Virus record (IMG/VR): IMGVR_UViG_3300044712_002668
Span: 186,001 to 250,000 of that record
DNA length: 64,000 bases
Strand: one strand, 5' to 3'
The position numbers were made by a program, and so were the translations under genes. Under the pieces are notes generated by a model that saw only the letters and a list, made by a program, of their open reading frames with translations, searched no databases and was not told the origin of the DNA. Of the stretch, positions 935 through 33,791 are shown piece by piece. Every line of letters starts with the position of its first letter. Within the stretch, counting starts at the first letter, position 1.

Positions 935-968
935 TAATTTGATATATAAGCGGAACGCGAGTTTAGAA

Positions 969-1037
969 TCACCATTAGTATAATGGCAGTACGGTACTCA
1001 TATGAGTACCAGTGCAGGTTCGAATCCTGTAGGTGAT
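969..1037 (+). pseudogene. degenerate tRNA-like gene (Met-CAT-like relic)
   Basis: D arm GTAT-AATGGCA-GTAC and T arm GCAGG-TTCGAAT-CCTGT are present; acceptor is one base short; anticodon arm is the palindrome GGTACTCATATGAGTACC with no 7-nt loop. Confidence 0.6.
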
Positions 1038-1076
1038 TTATACAAATTTCGTTCCGCTTATTTATTTAAGGGTTAA

Positions 1077-2384: not shown

Positions 2385-2615
2385 GTGGCATCAGATGATA
2401 AACCAAGAGTAGAAGGCTCGATAGAGGCAGCTAGAGGAAACGGATTTTTTGTAGTTGGAGTATTAACTGAAGTTGGTACTGTGACACAAGTTCTGTGTCA
2501 GTTGTCTGGTAAAATGAGGACTCATAATATAAAAATAGTGGAAGGGGATAAGGTTGAAATAGAACTTGATCCTTACAACATGTCAAAAGGTAGAATAATA
2601 TATAGGAAAAAGTGA
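2385..2615 (+). CDS. infA: translation initiation factor IF-1
   Basis: [38 protein letters not shown] matches the IF-1 signature. Confidence 0.93.
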
Positions 2616-3124
2616 TGAAGAAGCCAAGTAATTTTATCCAAAAGGGATTGTTGAGATTTATAGAAGGTGATGCTACAAACCCTACTGGTAGTAGTATGCA
2701 ATATATTTTGCAGGTTTGTAATGATGATGGTTTATATGGGGCAGGATTTTCAGGGGCGCTATCTAAGAGATACCCTCAAGTTGAATCTGAATACAGAAAG
2801 TTTTGGAGAAACAAGTTTGGTAAACTAAAGCTTGGAGAGATTCAGGTTATACAAGTAAAGAGCGATGTTGCTGTTATCAATATGATCGCTCAAAAGGGTG
2901 TTGTTTCCAAAACAAATCCAATACCTTTAGATTTGAAAGCTCTCAAAGAATGTTTATCAAAGGCTGGTACAGAAATCAGCGATAACTCTGCGTCAGCTCA
3001 TATGCCAAGAATTGGCTGTGGTTTGGCTGGAGGTAAATGGGAAGATGTTCAACCGTTAATAGAAGAAGAGTTATTGAAACGCGGGGTAAATGTTACAGTA
3101 TATGATTTACCAGAGGAAAAATGA
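2612..3124 (+). CDS. macro domain protein (ADP-ribose / Appr-1''-p processing; Poa1p/DarG-like)
   Basis: [23 protein letters not shown] and [13 protein letters not shown] motifs. Confidence 0.88.
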
Positions 3125-8152: not shown

Positions 8153-8865
8153 TAACTCACCTTATTTGGAATATATGATATTTTATCTTTACCACAGGTT
8201 GTTTCAAACAAAGCTTGAATCCATCTCTCTGCGGTAACATAATCTTCAATTATATCCAAACAACTCTCGACTTTTTCTAAATCGAATGTGATTTCATTTG
8301 AGTCCCTGAAGTTATCCAAACTCAACCAAACTTTATCATGTTCTTTATATTCTATAGCTTTAAGAAAATCATACACATCATTGCTATCAACTATGTAACC
8401 ATAATTATTATTGATTGTGCTATACTCTTTAGATAAAGGAAATAATGGTAATTTCTTTTTCTCTGCTAGAACCATGTAATCATTCTTGTCATCTGAATCT
8501 ACTATTATTTTTTTTCTAGTCAGGTTTAGTATATCCAGTATTTTTGGGGATGGTGGGGTATCTAATTGGATACGATGTAGGACGGCCCAGAGGGCAGGGT
8601 GTTCCAGTCGTAACGAAAGGTCTCCACGCTCTATGATATCTCGTCTCCACCTGCCGTGCAAGTGCCCGCAAACACGTAGCTTATCGCTATTGTTGATCAG
8701 GGTGTCAAGCCAGTCACTTGATGGATATGCCGTTTCGCGTTGCGTCAAGGATTTTAGATTTATGTTCCATTCTATAAAAGGATATTTTACAGATAGGTCA
8801 ACTATATCCTCTATATTAACGCTATCATCGATTCCATTAATGGATACTGTACAAACCATAAACAT
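8152..8865 (-). CDS. phage TIM-barrel-like hypothetical protein
   Basis: TVSINGIDD, YPFIEW, YPS..W and HLHG motifs recall a common phage family; function unknown. Confidence 0.45.
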   Translation of the reverse strand: MFMVCTVSINGIDDSVNIEDIVDLSVKYPFIEWNINLKSLTQRETAYPSSDWLDTLINNSDKLRVCGHLHGRWRRDIIERGDLSLRLEHPALWAVLHRIQLDTPPSPKILDILNLTRKKIIVDSDDKNDYMVLAEKKKLPLFPLSKEYSTINNNYGYIVDSNDVYDFLKAIEYKEHDKVWLSLDNFRDSNEITFDLEKVESCLDIIEDYVTAERWIQALFETTCGKDKISYIPNKVS

Positions 8866-16215: not shown

Positions 16216-16219
16216 AAAA

Positions 16220-16369
16220 AAGCAACGAAAATGGTGAGACCCTACATGCCTTTCGGCTCCGTCGTGTCTGCCAATTTCACCATACCTCTCTTGCGAGAGA
16301 TAGCGGGACTCGAACCCGCACATCTTTTGGATAACAGTTTTGCAGATGAAAGATCTCAGTCGCGTTGTT
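16220..16369 (-). ncRNA. scaffold RNA copy 1 carrying a circularly permuted class-II tRNA(GCA)
   Basis: P1-GCG-P2-UUUCA|UC scaffold; cargo 16259-16346 is 3' half, GCAA loop, then 5' half. Confidence 0.8.
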
Positions 16370-16372
16370 TAG

Positions 16373-16774: not shown

Positions 16775-18055
16775 CTATTCGTCATCCCAGATGCTATCCG
16801 TCTTGTCCTCTGCCATCGCCCCCATCGACTCCAATTTTACCTCTATCTCAAAAAATGTTGATAACCACTTCTTAAAACTAAGAAATGTTGATGTAACATT
16901 TTCTGTTTTATGTGGTCCTAGTAAAAATTCAGTTATTTCTGGTGTTCCAAAAACTTTCCATAATCCATTATCTGATAAAAATTTCTTTGGAACAACATAA
17001 TCTGAATATGTAAAATTACAAGATAATTTATCTATATGAGTAAACCCTAAAGAAAAATCAGGATCTATTTTACTATTATCTTTAATTATGTTAGAAGCTC
17101 TAAGGGCGTAAAACATAAGCTGTAGATCAAAGTAACCAGTTCTAAGTTTACCCTGCCAAGTACCAGTTACATTATGATCGTCAGAATAAATATGATCTAG
17201 TTTATCTGACTCTGTAGGAAAAGGCCCAGGTCCATGTCTTGTGGGATAAACCCTCAACAAGCCTAATTTCTTAATAGGATCATCATAGTTAGCTTCTTCT
17301 AACAAGGAATAAACGTTATTGAATGTGGTATCAGTCCAAGTATTATATGGAGTGAAACCTACATTCTCATCAAGAAGAACTCCTTGAGCACCTTCAAATA
17401 GAATATTTTCTTGCTGATGTTCAAATACATGTCTTAGATATGCCGAATCAGTTATGTGTAATCCTGACTCAATAAACTGCTGACATCTTTCAATAAAATA
17501 ATCTATCTCTTCTTCAGTACAGCAAATGTCAAAATTGTTTTTTACAATTTCATTTTGAATTCTTACTTTATTGAGTAGAATATTTTTAGTTTGTAAATCT
17601 TTTACTCTTAAAGAGAGATCTGGATAATCTATATTATACTTTACAGTTTCACCGATACCCATACCACAAGAACCATGGCGTTGATTACCACGATCTTGTT
17701 CTCTTTTTTTATTCAGTAGAATATGTACTGGAGTTGTTACTAAAGCTTCCCTATCTACAGATAAACGAAATAGAGGATTGTAAGGTAGGTCTGTTGCTTC
17801 ATTGAGAAGCGCCCCAGGATTTACAATCATATATTTTGACAAGTGTGTAAATACACTAGGCAAAAATGAACCAGCACCAAATTGTGCAAAGGTATGGTGT
17901 TGATCTTTAGTAACTACATTATGAGCGGCTTGTGCGCCGCCATTATATCTTATAACATGTTTTATGTCATATTTTCTGCACAAATAATCTGTAACAGAGC
18001 CTTTGCCCTCATCACCGAAACCAAGCCCGGCAACAGCAATTACTTTTCTGTTCAT
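16775..18055 (-). CDS. purA: adenylosuccinate synthetase
   Basis: GLGFGDEGKG P-loop, RYNGGAQAAH, EGAQG, TRHGPGPFP. Confidence 0.9.
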   Translation of the reverse strand: MNRKVIAVAGLGFGDEGKGSVTDYLCRKYDIKHVIRYNGGAQAAHNVVTKDQHHTFAQFGAGSFLPSVFTHLSKYMIVNPGALLNEATDLPYNPLFRLSVDREALVTTPVHILLNKKREQDRGNQRHGSCGMGIGETVKYNIDYPDLSLRVKDLQTKNILLNKVRIQNEIVKNNFDICCTEEEIDYFIERCQQFIESGLHITDSAYLRHVFEHQQENILFEGAQGVLLDENVGFTPYNTWTDTTFNNVYSLLEEANYDDPIKKLGLLRVYPTRHGPGPFPTESDKLDHIYSDDHNVTGTWQGKLRTGYFDLQLMFYALRASNIIKDNSKIDPDFSLGFTHIDKLSCNFTYSDYVVPKKFLSDNGLWKVFGTPEITEFLLGPHKTENVTSTFLSFKKWLSTFFEIEVKLESMGAMAEDKTDSIWDDE

Positions 18056-18130: not shown

Positions 18131-18136
18131 AATGAG

Positions 18137-18206
18137 TCGGCTTGTCAGGATTTCCACCTGAATCGCCCTGTACAATCAGGGGCTTTGAGAATTAAGCTAC
18201 AAGCCG
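18137..18206 (-). pseudogene. tRNA-Pro-like gene with aberrant 6-nt anticodon loop
   Basis: CGGCTTG/CAAGCCG-A73 (Pro identity); anticodon arm CCCTG-ATTGTA-CAGGG. Confidence 0.6.
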
Positions 18207-20502: not shown

Positions 20503-21321
20503 TTATTCCTTGAATTCTTTTGGCAAGATATCTACAAAACGTTTTAGATCAAAGTTCTTTGGATCTGAAACCTGACCATCACCTATTTCAATGATACGGA
20601 ATTTTCCGTCAGTTCTTCTCGCTATATCAACAGAGAAAAAACCGTTTGCAAAACCAATTTTATGTACACATTCTGTAAGTATCTCTGGTATGGTATACGG
20701 ATTTGTAGCATGTTTGGGAGAGAATTTCTCCGTATTTGAATATGCTATACCTTTTACTACAAAGAATCTTTGTTCAGAGTTTGTAAGATAATCTTCACCA
20801 TGTCTTACACATACCCCACCCTCAATGCATCCTCGATATTTTTTGATTGCTAAAACAACTTCTTGAATATCATCTTTGGATTTTACCAAAGAACCCGGTG
20901 ACATTGAGTTGGATTTTACAAAATCTTTTATAAAGTAACTAGGCCACTTTAAATTGGCCAAAGCTTCTTTGAAGTTTGCGTTTTCATCTAGTATGATGGT
21001 TTCAGCAGTAAGATGTGCAATCTTCGGATACCAGAATGGTAGGTGATGACAGAATCTATATGACTCTGTAGTAGTAAAAAGCTTGGCTCCGTATTTCTTT
21101 ATTTCATATTCAAGAATTTGATACTCATCGATATTGAGCATCCAGCCACGATATAGCACAGTATCGCCAGCTTTGATCGCTGGCTTGATAGAGATCTGTT
21201 GTCCGATAGTTATAACAGAGGCTTCGTAGCCGTTAGACTGTATAGTATCGAACTCTTCTCGCCAAACACAATCTGGCAAAAAGTCTTTTACTGGATCTGC
21301 TGGATAGAGTATTCGTAACAT
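20503..21321 (-). CDS. ATP-grasp domain protein (R2K-like)
   Basis: FIKDFVKS, EQRFFVV, FFSVDIA, IIEIGDGQVSD. Confidence 0.8.
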   Translation of the reverse strand: MLRILYPADPVKDFLPDCVWREEFDTIQSNGYEASVITIGQQISIKPAIKAGDTVLYRGWMLNIDEYQILEYEIKKYGAKLFTTTESYRFCHHLPFWYPKIAHLTAETIILDENANFKEALANLKWPSYFIKDFVKSNSMSPGSLVKSKDDIQEVVLAIKKYRGCIEGGVCVRHGEDYLTNSEQRFFVVKGIAYSNTEKFSPKHATNPYTIPEILTECVHKIGFANGFFSVDIARRTDGKFRIIEIGDGQVSDPKNFDLKRFVDILPKEFKE

Positions 21322-24921: not shown

Positions 24922-25314
24922 TTGGAGAAAAGTATGAGTAATCTTAAAAAAATAGCAATGTTGGCCGCCAGAAAAGCTGCAGTAGAAACATATAAATCTA
25001 TTATGAAAATGGCCGATCAACCATGGGAAGCTCCAATCTTAAAAGATGATCTGGGTAAAGAGATGGGTATTGATGATGCTGCTGTTTGTAAATTTTTGAC
25101 TGATAATGGGGCTCCAAATGTTGCTGAAACATACAGGGGTGCAAATATAAATCTACAAACTAACGAACCTGTACGTAAAGACGTTGCTACTTTGAGTGGT
25201 GAATGGGCCAATGTAAATAAAAAAGTAAAAATTGGAATCAAGACTCAAACAATTATAAGCAATAGTGTTTACAGACAAACAAAACCACCTGTAAGACTTG
25301 CTATTTATAGATAG
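24922..25314 (+). CDS. hypothetical protein sharing its N-terminus with 54538..54951
   Basis: NLKKIA..AA.KAA.ETY.SIMKMA. Confidence 0.65.
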   Translation: MEKSMSNLKKIAMLAARKAAVETYKSIMKMADQPWEAPILKDDLGKEMGIDDAAVCKFLTDNGAPNVAETYRGANINLQTNEPVRKDVATLSGEWANVNKKVKIGIKTQTIISNSVYRQTKPPVRLAIYR

Positions 25315-25315
25315 G

Positions 25316-25387
25316 GTGGCATACGGGTTACGCTCCCGTCAATGAGATGTTCACAGCATCCCGGCTTCGCTAGCTGCCTCATGCCAC
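25316..25387 (-). tRNA. tRNA-His(GTG)
   Basis: encoded G-1, GGATG-CTGTGAA-CATCT; T loop AGCGTAA. Confidence 0.85.
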
Positions 25388-25389
25388 AG

Positions 25390-25460
25390 TTCGGGTATCT
25401 GGACTCGAACCAGAATCAAGAGCTTCAGAGACTCTTATGTTGCCATTACATAATACCCGA
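25390..25460 (-). tRNA. tRNA-Gln(CTG)
   Basis: TCGGGTA/TACCCGA, AGAGT-CTCTGAA-GCTCT. Confidence 0.9.
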
Positions 25461-25471
25461 ATTTATTTTAA

Positions 25472-25765
25472 TTATCTATCTAAATCTTCTACTTCAATAC
25501 CTTTTTCTTTAAAAAAAGACATTATATCCATATCACACATAATCTCATCTCTATCAGCTAAAAAGCTGTAGACTTCATCATTCTCATACATACTCCAGTT
25601 GTGTACACTATAAGAATTTTGAGAATAGTTGTATCCACCATATTTATTACCAATTTCTTTGGTGAAGTTTTTTATAAAATTTATTTGATCTTGTGTGAGA
25701 TTGGTTTTCTGTATGATAAAGGAACAGCTTGAAGAATTTGAAACAAAACCAGTACGAACTTTCAT
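25472..25765 (-). CDS. phage protein of the MK.R.GFVSNSSS family
   Basis: N-terminus MKVRTGFVSNSSSCSFII; GGAG RBS. Confidence 0.7.
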   Translation of the reverse strand: MKVRTGFVSNSSSCSFIIQKTNLTQDQINFIKNFTKEIGNKYGGYNYSQNSYSVHNWSMYENDEVYSFLADRDEIMCDMDIMSFFKEKGIEVEDLDR

Positions 25766-25783
25766 AACTTATACTCCTGTGAA

Positions 25784-25860
25784 TGGTTGAGAAGGTGGGA
25801 CTCGAACCCACAAAAATAACAGCTTCAAAGACTGTTGCCTTGCCATTAGACTACTTCTCA
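25784..25860 (-). tRNA. tRNA-Gln(TTG)
   Basis: ACAGT-CTTTGAA-GCTGT, encoded CCA. Confidence 0.9.
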
Positions 25861-25861
25861 G

Positions 25862-25934
25862 TGACCCTAACCGGATTTGAACCGGTATGTTCTGGCTGAG
25901 AACCAAAAATCCTTAACCGTTAGATGATAGGGCC
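25862..25934 (-). tRNA. tRNA-Glu(CTC)
   Basis: GGCCCTA/TAGGGTC, TTTGG-TTCTCAG-CCAGA. Confidence 0.88.
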
Positions 25935-25977
25935 AAAATCGTGATGACAATTGCCAGCGCTGGTAAATATCATCACT

Positions 25978-26033
25978 AAATCTTGTTGAGGAATCGAACC
26001 CCCTTGTGCGCACTGCCAGTCCAGGCCAAGATT
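25978..26033 (-). ncRNA. 56-nt tRNA-like RNA lacking an anticodon arm
   Basis: AATCTTG/CAAGATT acceptor, T arm GGGG-TTCGATT-CCTC, middle only TGCGCA. Confidence 0.55.
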
Positions 26034-26036
26034 CTG

Positions 26037-26124
26037 TGCCTCTGGAGGGATTCGAACCCTCAAGCTCTTATATTGAGCGGCAGTTTTTGAAACTGCTGTG
26101 TATACCAAATTCCACCACATAGGC
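26037..26124 (-). tRNA. tRNA-Leu(CAA)
   Basis: GCAGT-TTCAAAA-ACTGC, long variable arm. Confidence 0.88.
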
Positions 26125-26130
26125 AAAAAC

Positions 26131-26308
26131 GGGGCTGCTCTACCGTTGAGCTACTCAACCTGTATTCAAACATTTCTTCGAACGGCACCTTCGCAAAGTG
26201 ATATCCCTTTGCACTCCAGGCTTTAGCTTACGCTTAACGTTGAGAGGAAATTGCCTTCCCAGGACTGTCATACATGTTGATACTGGATTCGAACCAGTGA
26301 CCAACCCC
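26131..26308 (-). ncRNA. circularly permuted tRNA-like gene without scaffold
   Basis: 3' half 26275-26308 precedes 5' half 26131-26160; GTTGA/TCAAC and GCCCC/GGGGT pair across the halves. Confidence 0.65.
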
Positions 26309-26312
26309 TCAG

Positions 26313-26386
26313 TACCGCAAAGTGGACTCGAACCACCATCCTTTTTCTTATGAGGAAAACGCTCAAACCAATTGAGCTATTGCGGT
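26313..26386 (-). tRNA. tRNA-Met(CAT)
   Basis: ACCGCAA/TTGCGGT, TTTTC-CTCATAA-GAAAA. Confidence 0.88.
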
Positions 26387-26391
26387 ATATA

Positions 26392-26496
26392 ATAGCGAAA
26401 ATGGTGTGACAAATGGGAACCGTCCCGTATTTAGGCCCGGAGTCGAACCGATGCCCTCCAATTTTGGCGGAGATGAAATGTCACGAACGCGCTACT
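26392..26496 (-). ncRNA. scaffold RNA copy 2 (degenerate T-arm cargo)
   Basis: UAGC-GCG...GACA-UUUCAUC...UGUC...UUUC-GCUA. Confidence 0.75.
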
Positions 26497-26498
26497 AG

Positions 26499-26581
26499 TG
26501 CCATTGACAGGATTCGAACCTGCATGAGAAAACTCGTCACGTTCTTAGCGTGATATGTATACCAAATTCCATCACAATGGC
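26499..26581 (-). tRNA. tRNA-Leu(AAG)
   Basis: TCACG-CTAAGAA-CGTGA, Leu-type D arm and variable arm. Confidence 0.85.
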
Positions 26582-26586
26582 ATGAA

Positions 26587-26760
26587 GATAACGAAAAGAT
26601 TGTCAGACGGGGTTTTTGCACTAGCCTCCCCGATGATTGTAAATTGAGACTTATTTACTACTAGCAAAACTAGCATCTCAATTTTGGTCGGGGCCGGGAA
26701 TCGCACCACGGTTTCTGTATTTTTCTGATATAGATGAACCATCCAACTATGCGCGTTATC
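26587..26760 (-). ncRNA. scaffold RNA copy 3 carrying a permuted tRNA-Pro-like cargo
   Basis: GAUAAC-GCG...GAUGG-UUCAUC; T arm + CCCCGACCA, hairpin linker, then UCGGGG. Confidence 0.75.
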
Positions 26761-26762
26761 TG

Positions 26763-26845
26763 TGCCGTCAACAGGACTCGAACCTGCATGAGAAATCTCG
26801 ATAGTTTTTAAAACTATTGTGTATACCAAATTCCACCATAACGGC
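26763..26845 (-). tRNA. tRNA-Leu(TAA)
   Basis: ATAGT-TTTAAAA-ACTAT. Confidence 0.9.
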
Positions 26846-26852
26846 TAAAATT

Positions 26853-27060
26853 AAAACAACGAAAAGGGCTCAGACGAAGTTTTTCCAGCATCCGGCCACC
26901 GCAAAAAGCATATTTTAGTTTCGGTTATGTTTCCGAACTCATCTCATCTCTGTCATTCCTGAATAGAAATCGGGGATGAGTACCGCGCGGCGTAAGGGAG
27001 TCGAACCCTCATCGTTTGATTCGTAGTTCAAGATGAATCGTCCAAAAATCGCGTTGTTTT
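26853..27060 (-). ncRNA. scaffold RNA copy 4 carrying a permuted tRNA-Arg(ACG)-like cargo
   Basis: AACAAC-GCG...GACGA-UUCAUC; CU-ACG-AA loop, T arm, ACGCCGC, linker, GCGGUG. Confidence 0.75.
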
Positions 27061-27063
27061 TAG

Positions 27064-27139
27064 ATGCGGGTCTTGGATTTGAACCAAGGGAACTAGGCTT
27101 ATGAGACCCAGGAGTTAGGCCGGACTACTCTAACCCGCA
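27064..27139 (-). tRNA. tRNA-Met(CAT), initiator-like
   Basis: TGCGGGT/ACCCGCA, TGGGT-CTCATAA-GCCTA, fMet-like D arm GAGT/ACTC. Confidence 0.82.
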
Positions 27140-27146
27140 ATAATGT

Positions 27147-27268
27147 AAGTAACGTAAAGATCGAGACCCTACATGCCCACATGGGCGATTCCCCAGGTAA
27201 AGAACCTCGAAAGGTTCGGCGGGGAATTAAGTTTCGAGCTTAGATGAAAGATCCCTAACGCGTTACTT
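27147..27268 (-). ncRNA. scaffold RNA copy 5 (structured non-tRNA cargo)
   Basis: AAGUAAC-GCG...GAUC-UUUCAUC...GGUC...UUAC-GUUACUU. Confidence 0.75.
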
Positions 27269-27305
27269 GGTATAACATATAACATTATATTATATGTTAT
27301 TTAGA

Positions 27306-27427
27306 AACAACGAAATTATATTGACAATGGGCCGGTATTTTTAGCACCGTTCTCCTTTGACCCAGACCGGAATTGAACCGGTTCTCGCCCTAATTTTTGA
27401 TGGATGTAATGTCAATAGCGCGTTGTT
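27306..27427 (-). ncRNA. scaffold RNA copy 6 (T arm plus acceptor-strand cargo)
   Basis: AACAAC-GCG...GACA-UUACAUC...ACCGG-UUCAAUU-CCGGU...UGUC...UUUC-GUUGUU. Confidence 0.75.
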
Positions 27428-27429
27428 AG

Positions 27430-27502
27430 TCTCCCAGGAAGGATTTAAACCTCCGGCCTAAACGTTCGTAGCGTTCCGCTCTATTCGCTGAGCTACTGGG
27501 AG
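27430..27502 (-). tRNA. tRNA-Arg(ACG)
   Basis: CTCCCAG/CTGGGAG, GAACG-CTACGAA-CGTTT. Confidence 0.88.
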
Positions 27503-27867
27503 AATTTATATAAATCTCTATCATTGCCTTTTTTACAAAGTACAAACCCTAACTTTGTATGTGACTTTATCGATGCAATATTATCATGTTTTATAATTGC
27601 GTATAAATGATCCAACTTTTCTGTTTTTATCAGCTCATCATACATTATATTTGAATATCCTTTACCTCTATATTCTGGTTTTATTTCAATATGAGAGCAC
27701 TTTTTACCATCGTATTCAAACACACCAACTTCACCTATTTGTTTATCATTACTGTAAACTGAATATAAATGACCTGGCAGATTATATATAGTATTGCCAA
27801 CAAGTTTTAATTGGGTTTTAATTGACGCTTGTTTGTAATAAATGTTTATATAATCATCAAGATACAT
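27493..27867 (-). CDS. GNAT-family acetyltransferase
   Basis: IEIKPEYRGKGYS acetyl-CoA motif, NIASIKSHTKLGF. Confidence 0.85.
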   Translation of the reverse strand: MYLDDYINIYYKQASIKTQLKLVGNTIYNLPGHLYSVYSNDKQIGEVGVFEYDGKKCSHIEIKPEYRGKGYSNIMYDELIKTEKLDHLYAIIKHDNIASIKSHTKLGFVLCKKGNDRDLYKFSQ

Positions 27868-27900
27868 ATTGTAAAGTTACAAAAATATGCATATAACAGG

Positions 27901-27983
27901 CTCCTGAGGAAAGACTCGAACTTCCATAATCCTTACGGATGACACGTTAACAGCGTGCTGCATTACCATTATGCTACCCAGGA
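27901..27983 (-). tRNA. tRNA-Asn(GTT) with long variable arm
   Basis: TCCTGGG/CTCAGGA-G73, GCACG-CTGTTAA-CGTGT, extra arm ATCC-GTAA-GGAT. Confidence 0.8.
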
Positions 27984-27988
27984 ATAAA

Positions 27989-28130
27989 CTTGACGAAAAG
28001 CTTGAAGACCATTTTTTTTCGCGCTTTACTATTAAGCTATATGAGCAAGAGTTTGATTTGCGCTCATATCGGGACTTGCACCCGAAACTTCGTCATTAAC
28101 AGTGATGAACGATCTTCTAATCGCGTCAAG
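27989..28130 (-). ncRNA. scaffold RNA copy 7 carrying a circularly permuted tRNA-Asn(GUU)
   Basis: cargo 28020-28105; joining CG|UCA gives an unbroken cloverleaf. Confidence 0.85.
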
Positions 28131-28132
28131 AG

Positions 28133-28205
28133 CGATCTGGACGGGAGTTGAACCCGCACAATACACTTCGACAGAGTGTTGCACTACCAATTGTGCTACC
28201 AGACC
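28133..28205 (-). tRNA. tRNA-Asp(GTC)
   Basis: ACACT-CTGTCGA-AGTGT, G73. Confidence 0.9.
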
Positions 28206-28210
28206 AAACG

Positions 28211-28285
28211 TGGGTTATCCCGGTAACGATCCGGGGAATTCTTCTACTTAAGAGGTAGTTGCTGTTCCATTCTAGCTTATAACCC
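28211..28285 (-). tRNA. tRNA-Lys(CTT)
   Basis: GGGTTAT/ATAACCC, CTAC-CTCTTAA-GTAG; T loop ATCGTTA. Confidence 0.8.
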
Positions 28286-28289
28286 ATAA

Positions 28290-28369
28290 CTTAACGAAAA
28301 TGTAAAAGACCTTTTTGTTTTTTAATTTTTCATATTAATTTTAGATGAAAGATCCTTCAGCGCGTTAAG
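28290..28369 (-). ncRNA. scaffold RNA copy 8 (minimal AU-rich cargo)
   Basis: CUUAAC-GCG...GAUC-UUUCAUC-(about 30 nt AU-rich)-GGUC...UUUC-GUUAAG. Confidence 0.75.
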
Positions 28370-28371
28370 AG

Positions 28372-28446
28372 TGGGCCCAGCCGGTAACGATCCGGCGAAT
28401 TCTTCTGCTTAAAAGGCAGCTGCTGTTCCATTCTAGCTTTAGGCCC
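28372..28446 (-). tRNA. tRNA-Lys(TTT)
   Basis: GGGCCTA/TGGGCCC, CTGC-CTTTTAA-GCAG; T loop ATCGTTA. Confidence 0.8.
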
Positions 28447-28452
28447 AATATG

Positions 28453-28568
28453 ATATGACGAAAAATTAATGACCTGTTTTTTCAGCGGGACTTGAACCCA
28501 CAAATGTTTCCGTATAGGGGAAATGCTTTAACCAATTTAGCGATGAAAGGTCATTCAGCGCGTCATAT
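28453..28568 (-). ncRNA. scaffold RNA copy 9 carrying an acceptor-less tRNA body (UAU)
   Basis: D arm, UUUCC-CCUAUAC-GGAAA and T arm lie directly between UUUCAUC and GGUC. Confidence 0.75.
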
Positions 28569-28644
28569 TGGTCCCGTCCCCTGGTTTCGCGCCAGGCTCC
28601 CTTGCTCTTCAGGCAAATGCTTTCACTAGATTAGCTTAGACGGG
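28569..28644 (-). tRNA. tRNA-Phe(GAA)
   Basis: TTTGC-CTGAAGA-GCAAG, encoded CCA; T loop CGCGAAA. Confidence 0.82.
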
Positions 28645-28652
28645 ATAATAGT

Positions 28653-28808
28653 AGATAACGAAAAATTGAAAAACCCTTTTTTACGCGCTCTGACCAACTG
28701 AGCTATCTGCCTATTTTGGGTTCAATTAAGAACCTTGTAGGCAGAATTGGATTCGAACCAATGACATCGTCCTTATAATGGATGAAAGATTTTTCTACCG
28801 CGTTATCT
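28653..28808 (-). ncRNA. scaffold RNA copy 10 carrying a circularly permuted tRNA-Ile(UAU)
   Basis: cargo 28684-28782; joining CG|UCC restores CGUCC/GGACG. Confidence 0.82.
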
Positions 28809-28809
28809 G

Positions 28810-28894
28810 TGGGGCTGATAGGATTCGAACCTACTAGGCCAATCGGCCGACAGTTTTACAGACTGTTGCAACTCTCCCGCTTTGCCGCAACCCC
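28810..28894 (-). tRNA. tRNA-Tyr(GTA)
   Basis: ACAGT-CTGTAAA-ACTGT, long variable arm. Confidence 0.9.
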
Positions 28895-28949
28895 ATAAAT
28901 AAATTCAGTTTTCAGTGATCAATGTTTTCTTTCTGCTTTTTTAGCAGAG

Positions 28950-29020
28950 CAGGCCCCTCCCGATTCGAACGGGAATTCACAGACTTGGAAACTATGCGGT
29001 TACCATTACCTCAGAGACCC
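28950..29020 (-). tRNA. tRNA-Trp(CCA)
   Basis: GGGTCTC/GGGGCCT-G73, ATAGT-TTCCAAG-TCTGT. Confidence 0.75.
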
Positions 29021-29159
29021 ATTTATCATATTGTCTTCTTTTCTTATTTGATTGTTTCTTGTATGCCCTCTTCGCTTCTCGTTCTTCTTTCTTTGTTCTA
29101 TAATTTCTTTTTAATGTTTTTTCTTTCAACCACTTTAGATCATTTTCCAACTCATCCAT
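28992..29159 (-). CDS. small basic hypothetical protein (not in the supplied track)
   Basis: 55-aa ORF MDELENDLKW...KRAYKKQSNKKRRQ; stop lies inside tRNA-Trp. Confidence 0.45.
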   Translation of the reverse strand: MDELENDLKWLKEKTLKRNYRTKKEEREAKRAYKKQSNKKRRQYDKWVSEVMVTA

Positions 29160-32432: not shown

Positions 32433-33791
32433 TTATAGTTTTGCAGCAGCCAATTCGGCCAACGGGGAACGTTCGCATTTTGATAAAGTAATATGTCCAA
32501 CCATTTCTTCATCTTTCATCTTCTCTATAGCTAAAGAAAAACCGTTTGTTTTCTTATCAAGATAGTGAGCATCGATTTGTTCTGGGTCACCGGTCAATAC
32601 TATTTTTGTTTTCTCACCACATCTTGTAATCAAAGTTTTAATCTCATGTAATGTAGTATTCTGCATTTCATCGGCTATGATGAATTGACATGGTAAGCTT
32701 CTTCCACGAATGTATGTCAATGGTTCAACTTTGATTTTCTCTTGTTCGAATAGTTGTCCATAATCCATTCCTGTTTTTTTCTTTCCACCCAACATCATAA
32801 TCAATTCAAGGTTGTCATAGATGGGCTGCATCCAGGGATCCATCTTCTCTCCCATATCTCCAGGTAGGAATCCTAAATCCTTTCCCATTGGCATAACCGG
32901 ACGGCTTACAATCATCTTCGTATAACCACCCTCTATAAATGTTTTATAGAACCCAGCACAAATGGCAAGTAAACTTTTACCACCACCAGCCGATCCAGAT
33001 AGGGTTACCATTTTAACATCGTCATCCAATAATAAATCCAATGCAAATTGTTGTTCCCTGTTCTTTGGTTTGATTCCCATCACCCCCTCTTTAGGAACTT
33101 TCAATGGACATATCTTTTTATATTTTCCAATGTACCTTCCTAAAGCTGTCCTTCCCATATCACTTCTCATCGCAATACAGGCATTAGGATATAAATCAAT
33201 ACCAGCAGGAGGAAGGATAGCTCCAGCTTTAAACATCTCATTTATATAAGAATCTTCAACCTCTAAATCTATAATGCCAGATATAAGCTGATCAGGGTCT
33301 ATTGATTGATTTTCATATGAAGCCGATTGTATTCCTAGACTGTCAGCACGAATGCGTAAGTTTACATCCATGGTGACTAGAATAGCTCTCAACTCTTGGC
33401 TCTCCTTTATATCAAGAGCTGATTGTAGGATGGCGTTGTCCATGCTGTTGTTCTCCATGCCAACACCAAGAAAACGTCTCTCACGGGGCACGTAGACCTT
33501 TAAAATACCATCCCCTACCGGTACTCCGTCTGATAAACTTCCTTCGCAACGCAACTCGTCAATCAAACGGCAGGCTTCCCGCGCTCCTCTCCCACGTATG
33601 CTCTGCTCTGATTTCAATTTATCAAGCTCTTCAAGCACATATATGGGGACATATAAATTGTTATCCTCAAATTTAAAAATAGATCTTGGATCGTGAATTA
33701 AAACATTCGTATCAAGAATATAACTTTTTTTTGTCAAAAGGACCTCTTTAGGGAGAATTTTATCTCCCTTCTTAATACCAGTATATGCCAA
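32433..33791 (-). CDS. phoH: PIN-PhoH (PhoH2/YlaK-like) protein
   Basis: PIN ILDTNVLIHD...VLEELD; PhoH GSAGGGKS, PLTYIRGRSL, DEMQN, LTGDPEQID. Confidence 0.9.
   Translation of the reverse strand: MAYTGIKKGDKILPKEVLLTKKSYILDTNVLIHDPRSIFKFEDNNLYVPIYVLEELDKLKSEQSIRGRGAREACRLIDELRCEGSLSDGVPVGDGILKVYVPRERRFLGVGMENNSMDNAILQSALDIKESQELRAILVTMDVNLRIRADSLGIQSASYENQSIDPDQLISGIIDLEVEDSYINEMFKAGAILPPAGIDLYPNACIAMRSDMGRTALGRYIGKYKKICPLKVPKEGVMGIKPKNREQQFALDLLLDDDVKMVTLSGSAGGGKSLLAICAGFYKTFIEGGYTKMIVSRPVMPMGKDLGFLPGDMGEKMDPWMQPIYDNLELIMMLGGKKKTGMDYGQLFEQEKIKVEPLTYIRGRSLPCQFIIADEMQNTTLHEIKTLITRCGEKTKIVLTGDPEQIDAHYLDKKTNGFSLAIEKMKDEEMVGHITLSKCERSPLAELAAAKL

What the first reader, a model, noticed from the sequence alone, without database searches (positions are those of the whole stretch)
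26587..27060. Copies 3 and 4: permuted Pro-like and Arg(ACG)-like cargo with long hairpin linkers and shrunken D arms
Seen: both have T arm, acceptor 3' strand (CCCCGA-CCA; ACGCCGC-G), a 60-90-nt hairpin-rich linker (AAAUUGAGA/UCUCAAUUU; ACUCAUC/GAUGAGU), the matching acceptor 5' strand, a short D remnant, and AAAAA before P2'. The break lies in or near the D arm, unlike copies 1, 7 and 10. Inference: the scaffold has captured tRNAs at several independent positions, as expected for insertion in front of UC dinucleotides.
Basis: partly seen in the sequence, partly recalled or inferred. Interest (0 to 1): 0.6.

Follow-up and report, generated by a model that had tools for sequence, protein, structure and literature searches.

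The report
Phage Y RNAs that mimic tRNA
The two "permuted tRNA" elements are real and belong to a 13-copy family of small tRNA-mimicking Y RNA-like genes that fill the gaps between tRNA genes of a giant phage, which also encodes the matching Ro60 RNA-binding protein: a known kind of RNA in an unusually expanded form.

Summary
On the minus strand, 26853-27061 (C7, "Arg-like") and 26585-26763 (C8, "Pro-like") each carry a T arm, then an acceptor 3' strand, a hairpin linker, the matching acceptor 5' strand, a reduced D region and an A-run. All of this sits inside a conserved two-helix stem.

This is the topology of YrlA-type Y RNAs: circularly permuted tRNA mimics with a closed acceptor. The stem (P1, an internal loop with invariant ACG-CG / UUUU-CGU, P2, invariant CAUC) occurs 13 times in this 336-kb phage. 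A model of it found 31 copies in the sequences searched, with strong covariation.

The phage encodes a divergent Ro60/Rsr protein about 1 kb upstream of three copies, on the same strand. That linkage recurs in 5 of 6 phage contigs carrying this Ro60 clade.

Orthologues of C7 and C8 in a related phage keep the T stem and the acceptor pairing through compensatory or different sequences. Their anticodon-like loops differ.

I found no support for a mobile scaffold that captures tRNAs in front of UC. True permuted tRNA genes and ribozymes are also unlikely.

Verdict: a new variant of a known kind, namely a variant Ro-binding motif and a large paralogue family interleaved with tRNA genes. Binding, processing and function are inferred, not shown.

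The parts
26585..26763 (-).
   Evidence: Sequence. MFE fold. Model R1 scores 27.2 bits, E 6e-4. Orthologue at L006 7820-8002.
26754..26761 (-). C8 P1 5' strand AGAUAACG. It is followed by the invariant unpaired CG (ACG-CG motif, 26752-26756).
   Evidence: Pairs with 26586-26593. Family covariation.
26586..26593 (-). C8 P1 3' strand CGUUAUCU, preceded by the invariant UUUU
26739..26747 (-). C8 P2 5' strand GUUGGAUGG
   Evidence: Pairs with 26602-26610. P2 covaries across 31 copies.
26602..26610 (-). C8 P2 3' strand CCGUCUGAC, preceded by the A-run at 26613-26617
26714..26736 (-). C8 invariant CAUC (26733-26736) and the hairpin that follows it, in the V / anticodon-like position. Its loop is CAGAAAA.
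   Evidence: The loop differs in the orthologue (UUCCAAC).
26694..26711 (-). C8 T arm CCG(U)GG-UGCGAUU-CCCGG, degenerate
   Evidence: The orthologue has a canonical UAAGG-UUCGAUU-CCUUA, with two compensatory pairs.
26685..26693 (-). C8 acceptor 3' strand CCCCGA plus CCA
   Evidence: Pairs with 26628-26633. p about 0.05 against shuffles.
26641..26684 (-). C8 linker hairpin AAAUUGAGA...UCUCAAUUU, which closes the acceptor stem
   Evidence: Conserved in the orthologue with one compensatory pair, A-U to G-C.
26618..26633 (-). C8 acceptor 5' strand UCGGGG (26628-26633) and the 10-nt D remnant AGGCUAGUGC
26762..26845 (-). tRNA-Leu(taa), an ordinary tRNA gene between the two elements
   Evidence: ARAGORN. 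Rfam tRNA 55.3 bits.
26853..27061 (-).
   Evidence: Sequence. Fold. Orthologue at L006 2348-2501. R1 misses it, probably because the insert is about 160 nt long.
27052..27060 (-). C7 P1 5' strand AAAACAACG, followed by the unpaired CG
   Evidence: Pairs with 26853-26861. Two compensatory pairs relative to the orthologue.
26853..26861 (-). C7 P1 3' strand CGUUGUUUU
27038..27046 (-). C7 P2 5' strand UUUGGACGA
   Evidence: Complementary to 26869-26877 (UCGUCUGAG), read directly from the sequence. This is the family P2 register. The MFE fold chose an alternative pairing here.
26869..26877 (-). C7 P2 3' strand UCGUCUGAG, preceded by the A-run at 26880-26884
   Evidence: The A-run is 6 nt in a freshwater variant and in the orthologue.
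27010..27035 (-). C7 invariant CAUC and hairpin CAUC-UUGA-ACUACGAA-UCAA-AC-GAUG. It carries the 'ACG' anticodon-like loop.
   Evidence: The orthologue's loop is CCGAUAA, so it is not conserved.
26994..27010 (-). C7 T arm GAGGG-UUCGACU-CCCUU
   Evidence: Three compensatory pairs relative to the orthologue.
26986..26993 (-). C7 acceptor 3' strand ACGCCGC plus G
   Evidence: Pairs with 26896-26902. The orthologue has GCGCCGC-A-CCA.
26903..26985 (-). C7 83-nt linker with hairpins ACUCAUC/GAUGAGU and UUCGG/CCGAA
   Evidence: It is replaced by a 20-nt hairpin in the orthologue. One pair is broken in a natural variant.
26885..26902 (-). C7 acceptor 5' strand GCGGUGG (26896-26902) and D remnant CCGGAUGCUGG, which can form a 4-bp mini-hairpin
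28652..28810 (-). C1: sister copy with a complete permuted tRNA-like module. This is the best Rfam YrlA match in the window.
   Evidence: RF02553 33.1 bits, full model, E 1.4e-4. ARAGORN calls a tRNA after rotation.
28452..28570 (-). C2: sister copy whose apical module is a tRNA-like cloverleaf in normal order. ARAGORN called it tRNA-Ile(tat).
28288..28372 (-). C3: 'empty' copy, scaffold only
   Evidence: R1 88.9 bits.
27987..28133 (-). C4: sister copy with a complete permuted Asn(GUU)-like module
27304..27430 (-). C5: sister copy with a T arm and closed acceptor but no D arm
27146..27270 (-). C6: sister copy whose apical module is not tRNA-like
26389..26499 (-). C9: small sister copy (hairpin, T arm, short hairpin)
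16219..16372 (-). C12: sister copy with its acceptor closed by a GCAA tetraloop

Best explanation
C7 and C8 are two paralogues of a phage-encoded family of Y RNA-like small RNAs of the YrlA type.

Architecture:
- Each RNA's 5' and 3' ends pair into a stem - internal loop - stem (P1, invariant ACG-CG opposite UUUU-CGU, P2).
- I take this stem to be the docking site for the phage's own Ro60/Rsr protein.
- The apical part is a tRNA mimic in circularly permuted order: hairpin, T arm, an acceptor stem closed by a loop or hairpin, and a D region that is reduced in C7 and C8.

Likely maturation: the genes fill the spacers of the tRNA array. P1 starts 0-3 nt after the upstream tRNA and ends 4-9 nt before the next one. 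Ordinary tRNA end-processing (RNase P, 3' trimming) would therefore release them as stable RNAs with paired ends.

Likely function: by analogy with characterised Y RNAs, they would tether or gate Ro60. The conserved neighbouring DEDD exonuclease or host exonucleases may be involved, and the partners would be factors that recognise tRNA shape.

Shown here: the anatomy, the covariation, the orthology, the Ro60 gene and its linkage to the scaffold.

Inferred: Ro60 binding, the processing route and the cellular role.
For: 1. Topology and homology signal
- Rfam YrlA (RF02553) aligns over its full length to sister copy C1: 33.1 bits, E 1.4e-4.

2. Scaffold structure
- 31 copies were found by model R1.
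- 92% of cells are paired versus 68% in shuffles.
- 124 cells changed on both sides versus 33 in shuffles.
- Slid controls give 31-51% paired.

3. Ro60 partner
- The gene at G000 181732-183327 (531 aa) hits Pfam vWA_Ro60 above its cut-off.
- It aligns over residues 33-494 to D. radiodurans Rsr, PDB 2NVO, E 1.6e-8.
- It hits NCBIfam Rsr, E 4.5e-10.
- Its model's 13 best PDB matches are all Ro60/Rsr (E 2.6e-10 to 2.6e-7), and the next hit is at 4e-3.

4. Linkage
- Copies Pa, Pb and Pc lie 1.0-1.6 kb downstream of the Ro60 gene on the same strand.
- In 4 of 5 further IMG/VR contigs with this Ro60 clade, R1 copies lie 0.7-3.7 kb downstream on the same strand.
- Every large scaffold-positive contig has one Rsr-like gene.

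5. C7 and C8 specifically
- Orthologues in G001 keep P1, the T stem, the acceptor, the linker hairpin and the reduced D region. There are compensatory changes in P1, the T stem and the linker hairpin, and the acceptor is kept with a different sequence (C8) or a near-identical one (C7).

6. Precedent
- In Gordonia phage Mareelih a Ro-like gene sits directly upstream of a 35-tRNA array that contains a YrlA match.
- Thermus phage phiLo Ro60 binds two phage Y RNA-like RNAs that have a CGAA bulge (PMC12135203).
Against: - C7 and C8 lie about 29 kb from the Ro60 gene, on the other strand.
- No copy reaches the Rfam gathering score (69 bits), and C7 and C8 get no YrlA match at all.
- The published Ro-recognition motif GNCGAAN0-1G / CGAA is replaced here by RNCGCG. 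Binding is therefore an extrapolation.
- One Ro60-clade contig (G005, 49% complete) shows no scaffold copy.
- The TROVE Pfam model itself did not hit.
- There is no RNA data: all five runs holding this DNA are DNA runs.
- The Ro60 structure model has low confidence (pLDDT 58).
Confidence: 0.72

Rival explanations
1. These are genuine circularly permuted tRNA genes, as in Cyanidioschyzon. The scaffold stem would be cut, the ends ligated into a circle, and RNase P and 3' processing would then remove the linker to give working tRNA-Arg and tRNA-Pro.
For: - The order is right: 3' half, linker, 5' half.
- N73-CCA is encoded directly after the acceptor 3' strand in C8 and in both G001 orthologues, while only 5 of 36 ordinary tRNAs of this phage show CCA.
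- Sister copies C1, C4 and C12 become ARAGORN-callable tRNAs after rotation.
Against: - C7, C8 and their orthologues are never called as tRNAs after rotation and scaffold excision.
- Their D arms are reduced to 10-11 nt.
- The anticodon-like loops differ between orthologues: ACG versus GAU, and GAA versus CCA.
- There is no bulge-helix-bulge at the junction; instead there is a long covarying stem with sequence-invariant loops that is also present in empty copies.
- No RtcB, Rnl-type ligase or splicing endonuclease was found in three phage records.
- The Ro60 linkage explains the scaffold.
Confidence: 0.06
2. This is the reader's model: a mobile or ribozyme-like scaffold that has repeatedly captured tRNAs by inserting in front of UC dinucleotides.
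For: - The element is repeated with variable inserts.
- One copy (C2) holds a tRNA-like module in normal order while the others are permuted. The tRNA-like modules may therefore have more than one origin.
Against: - No ribozyme or intron family matched at E up to 10, apart from a weak chance-level group II fragment elsewhere in the array.
- The insert sits at the same place in every copy, after the invariant CAUC.
- Orthologous copies with the same modules occur in related phages.
- The copies exactly fill tRNA spacers rather than interrupting genes.
- I noticed no transposase-like gene among the neighbours scanned.
Confidence: 0.05
3. These are structured spacer elements whose main job is to organise processing of the polycistronic tRNA precursor, or decayed tRNA duplicates with no trans-acting role and no Ro60 involvement.
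For: - The copies sit precisely between tRNAs.
- C7 and C8 lie far from the Ro60 gene.
- C8's T loop is degenerate, and the linker varies in length. One of its pairs is broken in a natural variant.
Against: - Three copies next to Ro60 are not flanked by tRNAs on both sides.
- The loop nucleotides ACG-CG, UUUU and CAUC are invariant across five phage lineages, which points to a specific ligand rather than a mere hairpin.
- Compensatory changes maintain the T and acceptor helices, which argues against decay.
Confidence: 0.12
4. These are two-piece (permuted) tmRNA-like genes. A T arm, acceptor 3' strand with CCA, an intervening segment, an acceptor 5' strand, a reduced D loop and a long helix are also the gene order of permuted tmRNA.
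For: The gene order matches, and the D loop is reduced (CUGGA-like in C7).
Against: - ARAGORN finds no tmRNA, and Rfam tmRNA gives only a 7-bit fragment elsewhere.
- After the helix the RNA simply ends: there are no pseudoknots and no tag reading frame.
- The same scaffold carries non-tRNA or empty tips.
Confidence: 0.02

Closest known systems
YrlA (Y RNA-like A; Rfam RF02553; Chen et al. 2014, PMC4201824; structure in bioRxiv 10.1101/312249)
   Same: - The 5' and 3' ends pair into a stem with an internal loop that holds a conserved NCG-containing motif.
- The apical domain is a permuted tRNA mimic: optional V hairpin, T arm, closed acceptor stem, D region.
- It is encoded near a Ro60/Rsr gene on the same strand, and it is found in phages.
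- M. smegmatis YrlA is cut by RNase P and receives CCA. The encoded N73-CCA seen here may echo that.
   Different: - The motif is RNCGCG opposite UUUU, not GNCGAAN0-1G.
- No copy reaches the Rfam threshold.
- There are 13 paralogues per genome rather than the one to a few described in the papers read here, and most lie in a tRNA array 17-31 kb from Ro60.
- C7 and C8 have 10-11-nt D remnants and 50-80-nt hairpin inserts in the acceptor loop.
- Some copies have empty, non-tRNA or normal-order tRNA tips.
Phage Ro60 with phage Y RNA-like RNAs (Thermus phage phiLo Yrl1/Yrl2, PMC12135203; actinophages such as Gordonia phage Mareelih)
   Same: - A phage-encoded Ro60 has adjacent small stem-bulge-stem RNAs.
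- In Mareelih the Ro-like gene heads a tRNA array that contains a YrlA match.
   Different: - The Ro60 here is only 16-25% identical to those proteins.
- Model R1 finds nothing in Mareelih or in two huge-phage records.
- phiLo has two Yrls with a CGAA bulge, and the passages I read do not describe a tRNA-like domain.
Circularly permuted tRNA genes of Cyanidioschyzon and some green algae and archaea (PMC3978253)
   Same: The 3' half precedes the 5' half, and a linker joins the acceptor strands.
   Different: Those mature into real tRNAs through a BHB motif, the splicing endonuclease and a ligase. Here there is no BHB, no such enzymes were found, and the anticodon-like loops are not conserved.
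D. radiodurans Yrn1 and two-piece tmRNA
   Same: Both are tRNA-like domains with a T arm but only a rudimentary D region.
   Different: In Yrn1 the T and D arms are oriented differently relative to the RNA's 5' end, and the stem-loop between them may sit in the anticodon-arm rather than the acceptor position. tmRNA carries pseudoknots and a tag reading frame.

Membership tests
Y RNA / YrlA | Encoded close to (within about 4 kb of) a Ro60/Rsr gene and on the same strand | tested here: met
   Met for the family. Pa, Pb and Pc lie 1.0-1.6 kb downstream of the Ro60 homologue on the same strand. The same holds in 4 of 5 other contigs of this Ro60 clade. C7 and C8 themselves lie about 29 kb away on the opposite strand.
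Y RNA / YrlA | 5' and 3' ends pair into a stem interrupted by an internal loop or bulge | tested here: met
   P1 and P2 covary: 92% of cells paired versus 68% in shuffles, and 15 of 18 pairs show changes on both sides.
Y RNA / YrlA | Conserved Ro-recognition motif GNCGAAN0-1G (CGAA) near the 5' end | tested here: not met
   The invariant motif here is (A/G)NCG-CG. The NCG is shared, but CG stands in place of AA.
Y RNA / YrlA | tRNA-like module in the order (V) - T arm - closed acceptor stem - D arm | tested here: met
   C7 and C8 have a hairpin, T arm, closed acceptor and reduced D region. Full versions occur in C1, C4 and C12. The acceptor complement is present in 12 of 17 T-arm-bearing copies.
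Y RNA / YrlA | Score at or above the Rfam RF02553 gathering threshold (69 bits) | tested here: not met
   The best copy, C1, scores 33.1 bits. C7 and C8 are not matched.
Y RNA / YrlA | Physical binding to Ro60; tRNA-type modifications; RNase P cleavage | not testable with these tools
   No RNA runs hold this sequence. The complex predictor takes proteins only.
Ro60/Rsr protein (the proposed partner) | HEAT-repeat ring plus C-terminal vWA domain; homology to solved Ro60 structures | tested here: met
   Pfam vWA_Ro60 33 bits against a 27.7 cut-off. 2NVO E 1.6e-8 over residues 33-494. NCBIfam Rsr E 4.5e-10, far below its equivalog cut-off. The Foldseek top 13 hits are all Ro60. The TROVE Pfam model did not hit.
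Circularly permuted tRNA gene | Rotation restores a canonical cloverleaf with a conserved anticodon | tested here: not met
   ARAGORN made no call in any of 840 junction variants for C7, C8 or either orthologue. The anticodon-like loops differ between orthologues.
Circularly permuted tRNA gene | BHB motif at the junction, with a splicing endonuclease and an RNA ligase available | tested here: inconclusive
   No 3-4-3 bulge-helix-bulge is seen by inspection. No tRNA_int_endo, RtcB or RNA_ligase gene was found in three phage records. The host is unknown and the records are 10-78% complete.
Two-piece tmRNA | Tag reading frame and pseudoknots; detection by ARAGORN or Rfam | tested here: not met
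Self-cleaving ribozyme or intron scaffold | Match to a known catalytic RNA family | tested here: not met
   The E-value scan of 25200-29100 against 4227 Rfam families gave no ribozyme match.

The most novel reading that the evidence does not exclude
The giant phage uses its tRNA array as a production line for a battery of about 13 different Ro60-bound tRNA mimics. Some of them (C8 and the G001 orthologues of C7 and C8) encode N73-CCA straight after a closed acceptor stem. These would be opened by RNase P in the acceptor loop to give two-piece, CCA-ended tRNA look-alikes. Such look-alikes would act as decoys or adaptors: they could soak up host tRNA-targeting defence nucleases, or steer Ro60 and the adjacent DEDD exonuclease onto host tRNAs or tRNA-binding enzymes.
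Probability: 0.12. Interest if true: 0.8.

Novelty: new variant of a known kind. Interest (0 to 1): 0.5.

Why it matters

This phage lineage offers a natural series on one Ro60-docking stem:
- empty tips;
- full permuted tRNAs with anticodon-like loops;
- versions with a reduced D region and long inserts in the acceptor loop;
- a normal-order cloverleaf;
- non-tRNA tips.

Alongside these it has a divergent Ro60 and a variant docking motif (CGCG in place of CGAA). Together these make direct tests possible of motif-protein co-variation and of partner specificity.

There is also a practical point for annotation. At least one ARAGORN "tRNA" in such arrays (Ile-tat at 28476-28550) is probably a Y RNA module, and the "spacers" of phage tRNA arrays can be genes.

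Tried and rejected
- **Rfam at gathering thresholds:** only tRNAs.
- **Nucleotide search of GenBank phages with the array:** only tRNA-sized matches. The neighbouring 858-aa protein has no phage match.
- **TROVE Pfam model in six frames:** no hit in G000, G001 or G002. This at first argued against a Y RNA reading. It was overturned when synteny analysis led to the 531-aa protein and its vWA_Ro60 / Rsr matches.
- **Exact 17-20-nt patterns from C7 and C8 in IMG/VR:** found only the one orthologous contig.
- **Generic pattern scan of bacterial genomes and metagenomes:** Only L071, L145 and L160 look genuine, so absence from bacteria is not shown.
- **Model R1:** misses C7 and the G001 orthologue of C8, and with filters off also C8, because of the long inserts.
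- **R1 on huge-phage record LR745208 and on loci from LR745206 and Gordonia phage Mareelih:** nothing.
- **Laying DNA contigs of four metagenome runs:** gave a few variants but no RNA information. The "joints" reported there come from tRNA-like similarity to other organisms and were ignored.
- **BLASTN for a third orthologue of C7 or C8 in G004 and other loci:** nothing.
- **AlphaFold model of Ro60:** built from only 3 sequences and of low confidence. I used it only for the fold search.
- **Technical failures:** one script call returned no answer, and the Sim et al. 2020 review was not held.
Full report
**Setting**

The window is part of a 335,988-bp IMG/VR virus record (window = G000 186001-250000). 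The DNA comes from a rhizosphere metagenome, with close variants in freshwater samples, and no RNA run holds it. ARAGORN finds 34 tRNA genes in the window, nearly all on the minus strand, and Rfam adds a few more.

The finding (26587-27060) covers two inter-tRNA spacers read on the minus strand, with tRNA-Leu(taa) (26762-26845) between them:
- C7 = 26853-27061, between tRNA-Met and tRNA-Leu(taa).
- C8 = 26585-26763, between tRNA-Leu(taa) and tRNA-Leu(aag).

Its copy 3 is then C8 ("Pro-like") and its copy 4 is C7 ("Arg-like").

**Observation**

C8 reads, 5' to 3':
- AGAUAACG (P1), CG plus a few nt, GUUGGAUGG (P2), UU, CAUC, a weak hairpin;
- an irregular T arm CCG(U)GG-UGCGAUU-CCCGG;
- CCCCGA, CCA;
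- the hairpin AAAUUGAGA...UCUCAAUUU;
- UCGGGG, AGGCUAGUGC, AAAAA;
- CCGUCUGAC (P2'), CAAUCUUUU, CGUUAUCU (P1').

The MFE fold gives exactly this layout (z = -2.7).

C7 has the same order, with T arm GAGGG-UUCGACU-CCCUU, ACGCCGC-G, an 83-nt linker, GCGGUGG, CCGGAUGCUGG and AAAAA.

Small corrections: the C8 linker is about 51 nt, and both copies also have a hairpin between CAUC and the T arm.

Each acceptor complement alone is only modestly improbable (p about 0.13 and 0.05 against shuffles). The weight comes from its fixed position and from comparison with relatives.

**The scaffold is a family**

Motif and pairing scans found 13 copies in this genome. Ten lie on the minus strand of the window (C1-C9, C12). 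Three (Pa, Pb, Pc) lie on the plus strand just upstream of the window, at G000 184342-184900.

A pattern scan of IMG/VR found true relatives in two other large phage contigs (L006 = G001, L003 = G002). A few short metagenome contigs also carry it.

A covariance model built from seven "empty" copies (R1) recovers 31 copies. On that alignment:
- P1 and P2 are 92% paired, against 68% in shuffles and 31-51% when the partner is slid.
- 124 cells changed on both sides, against 33 in shuffles.

The alignment was fitted to the model, so these numbers lean towards the structure, but the margin is large.

The consensus is nnnnnAACG-CG-n(3-7)-[P2, with an invariant A-U pair]-UU-CAUC ... A-rich-[P2']-n(3-7)-UUUU-CGUUnnnnn. 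ACG-CG, UUUU and CAUC are invariant even in copies whose tip is only about 15-30 nt.

**What the tips are**

Rfam's YrlA model aligns over its full length to C1: 33.1 bits, E 1.4e-4, below the 69-bit threshold.

The YrlA papers describe exactly this design:
- a 5'/3' stem with a conserved motif near the 5' end;
- an optional V hairpin, a T arm, an acceptor-like stem-loop and a D arm;
- one member (M. smegmatis) is opened by RNase P and receives CCA.

I rotated each copy in silico and removed the scaffold. ARAGORN then calls tRNAs for C1 (mostly Ile-UAU), C4 (Asn-GUU), C12 and two G001 copies. It makes no call for C7, C8, their orthologues, C5, C6, C9 or Pa. Shuffled controls gave no call in 10 tries for any copy.

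The difference, though, is a reduced D region, not a different break point. Nearly every copy with a tRNA-like module has the order P2, CAUC, hairpin, T, closed acceptor, D, P2'; the clear exception is C2, whose module is a normal-order cloverleaf.

**Orthologues**

G001 carries orthologues of C8 (L006 7820-8002, 87% column identity) and C7 (L006 2348-2501, 76%).
- They fold independently into the same architecture.
- The T stems show two (C8) and three (C7) compensatory pairs. P1 of C7 shows two, and the C8 linker hairpin shows one.
- The acceptor helix is kept with a different sequence in C8 (CCCCGA/UCGGGG versus CUGCCCG/UGGGCAG). In C7's orthologue it is perfect (GCGCCGC / GCGGCGG read with A73).
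- Both orthologues encode N73-CCA, as does C8 in slightly shifted form. Only 5 of 36 ordinary tRNAs of this phage show CCA.
- The 10-11-nt D remnants are conserved in length and can form mini-hairpins.
- The hairpin loops that looked like anticodons differ: ACG versus GAU, and GAA versus CCA.
- The long C7 linker is replaced by a 20-nt hairpin in the orthologue.

Across three phages, the 7 nt just 3' of the T stem has a 6-7-bp complement in 12 of 17 T-arm-bearing copies, with a different sequence in nearly every copy (C7 and its orthologue share most of theirs).

A freshwater variant differs by one extra A in each A-run, one extra C in the C8 acceptor 3' strand and one unpaired change in the C7 linker.

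**The partner**

The TROVE Pfam model found nothing. Synteny analysis between the phages then pointed to a 531-aa protein at G000 181732-183327. It lies next to the Pa/Pb/Pc cluster and is conserved next to scaffold clusters in G001 and G002. The evidence that it is Ro60/Rsr:
- Pfam vWA_Ro60 above its cut-off.
- Alignment over residues 33-494 to D. radiodurans Rsr, PDB 2NVO, E 1.6e-8.
- NCBIfam Rsr at E 4.5e-10; all three orthologues hit this model.
- Its (low-confidence) model's 13 best PDB matches are all Ro60/Rsr, including Thermus phage phiLo Ro60. The next hit is five orders of magnitude worse.

Each phage has one such gene.

A search with the three-protein alignment found five IMG/VR contigs with this clade. 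In four of them R1 copies lie 0.7-3.7 kb downstream on the same strand. One contig (G005, 49% complete) has none. G004 also has a second cluster of cargo-bearing copies with the same topology.

A DEDD (RNase T-like) exonuclease gene sits just upstream of Ro60 in all three phages.

This satisfies the published operational criterion for Y RNA candidates: within 4 kb of Ro60, on the same strand.

**Mechanism**

Shown:
- the stem and its covariation;
- the tRNA-mimic topology and its conservation;
- the Ro60 homologue and its linkage to the scaffold;
- P1 begins 0-3 nt after the upstream tRNA and ends 4-9 nt before the next tRNA.

Inferred:
- The array is transcribed as a precursor, and RNase P together with tRNA 3'-end processing frees the Y RNAs with protected, paired ends.
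- The ACG-CG / UUUU-CGU internal loop is the Ro60 docking site. It would be the analogue of the CGAA bulge of phiLo Yrls and of GNCGAAN0-1G in YrlA.
- The tRNA-like tips engage factors that read tRNA shape. Some may be opened by RNase P to expose CCA.
- The biological role is open. Candidates are tethering Ro60 to an exonuclease, gating Ro60, or acting as a decoy for tRNA-directed enzymes.

**Rivals**

- *True permuted tRNA genes.* Unlikely, because D arms are missing, the anticodon-like loops are not conserved and there is no BHB. No ligase or endonuclease was found. The scaffold's invariant loops also occur in empty copies.
- *A mobile or ribozyme scaffold.* No family match. The copies are orthologous between phages and fit the spacers exactly.
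- *Mere processing spacers or decayed duplicates.* These do not explain the invariant loop nucleotides, the compensatory changes or the Ro60 linkage. This rival keeps some weight, because C7 and C8 are far from Ro60 and no RNA data exist.

**Comparison and novelty**

Phage Ro60 genes with YrlA-like RNAs are known: mycobacteriophages, phage G and CcrColossus (as cited), and phiLo. In Gordonia phage Mareelih I found a Ro-like gene heading a 35-tRNA array that contains one YrlA match of 52 bits. The kind is therefore known.

What is new here:
- a sequence family that neither Rfam nor R1 connects to the known ones;
- a changed docking motif, paired with a Ro60 only 16-25% identical to characterised ones;
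- expansion to 13 paralogues, at least 13 in G001 and at least 11 in G004, interleaved with tRNA genes;
- a graded series of tips.

I rate it a new variant of a known kind, of moderate interest.

Noticed in passing
window 26125-26311 (-): Another permuted tRNA-like RNA, this one without the ACG-CG/UUUU-CGU scaffold. It reads GGGGU, variable loop, T arm ACUGG-UUCGAAU-CCAGU, acceptor 3' strand, a structured insert of about 105 nt, acceptor 5' strand, a full D arm UAGCUCAACGGUAGAGCA, then GCCCC. Its ends pair like an anticodon stem opened at the loop. G001 has a similar start after its tRNA-Met. ARAGORN does not call it after rotation.
   Followed up: partly
window 28476-28550 (-): ARAGORN's 'tRNA-Ile(tat)' lies inside scaffold copy C2. 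Its short acceptor helix continues directly into P2, and position 33 of its loop is C. It is probably a Y RNA tip rather than a free tRNA.
   Followed up: partly
window 25935-26035 (-) and 25296-25388 (-): Two further structured tRNA-like spacers. One has acceptor, D and T arms but no anticodon arm, followed by a long hairpin. The other is a cloverleaf with a 7-bp closing stem and a CUGUGAA (His-like) loop that neither ARAGORN nor Rfam called.
   Followed up: partly
window 28210-28290 (-) and 28372-28446 (-): Two paralogous odd tRNAs with an unusual T loop, AUCGUUA. One reaches only 38.7 bits with Rfam and the other is not called at all. The first has a CUU (Lys-like) anticodon loop.
   Followed up: no
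G000 180655-181347 (+), outside the window (L252 4656-5348): A DEDD / RNase T-like 3'-5' exonuclease gene lies immediately upstream of the Ro60 homologue. It is conserved in the same position in G001 and G002 (62% and 45% identity). It is a candidate nuclease partner of the Ro60 RNP.
   Followed up: partly
window 32433-33791 (-), 27493-27867 (-), 20503-21321 (-), 16775-18055 (-), 2612-3124 (+): Genes in and around the tRNA array: a PIN-PhoH (PhoH2-type) protein, a small GNAT acetyltransferase inside the array, an R2K-clade ATP-grasp protein, adenylosuccinate synthetase and a macro-domain protein.
   Followed up: no
window 967-1039 (+) and 18136-18206 (-): ARAGORN reports two tRNA-like genes with 2-nt 'anticodons' (ta, tg), meaning abnormal anticodon loops.
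   Followed up: no
window 26612, 26689, 26879: A freshwater-metagenome variant (run X3) has one extra A in the A-run of both C8 and C7, and one extra C in the C8 acceptor 3' strand. The A-run length therefore varies between 5 and 6, as it does in the G001 orthologue of C7.
   Followed up: partly
L253 (Gordonia phage Mareelih, OP820470.1) 8647-8746: A YrlA match of 52 bits overlaps the annotated tRNA-Leu(gag) (locus 8607-8695) inside the tRNA array downstream of the Ro-like gene. That annotated tRNA may be a Y RNA.
   Followed up: no
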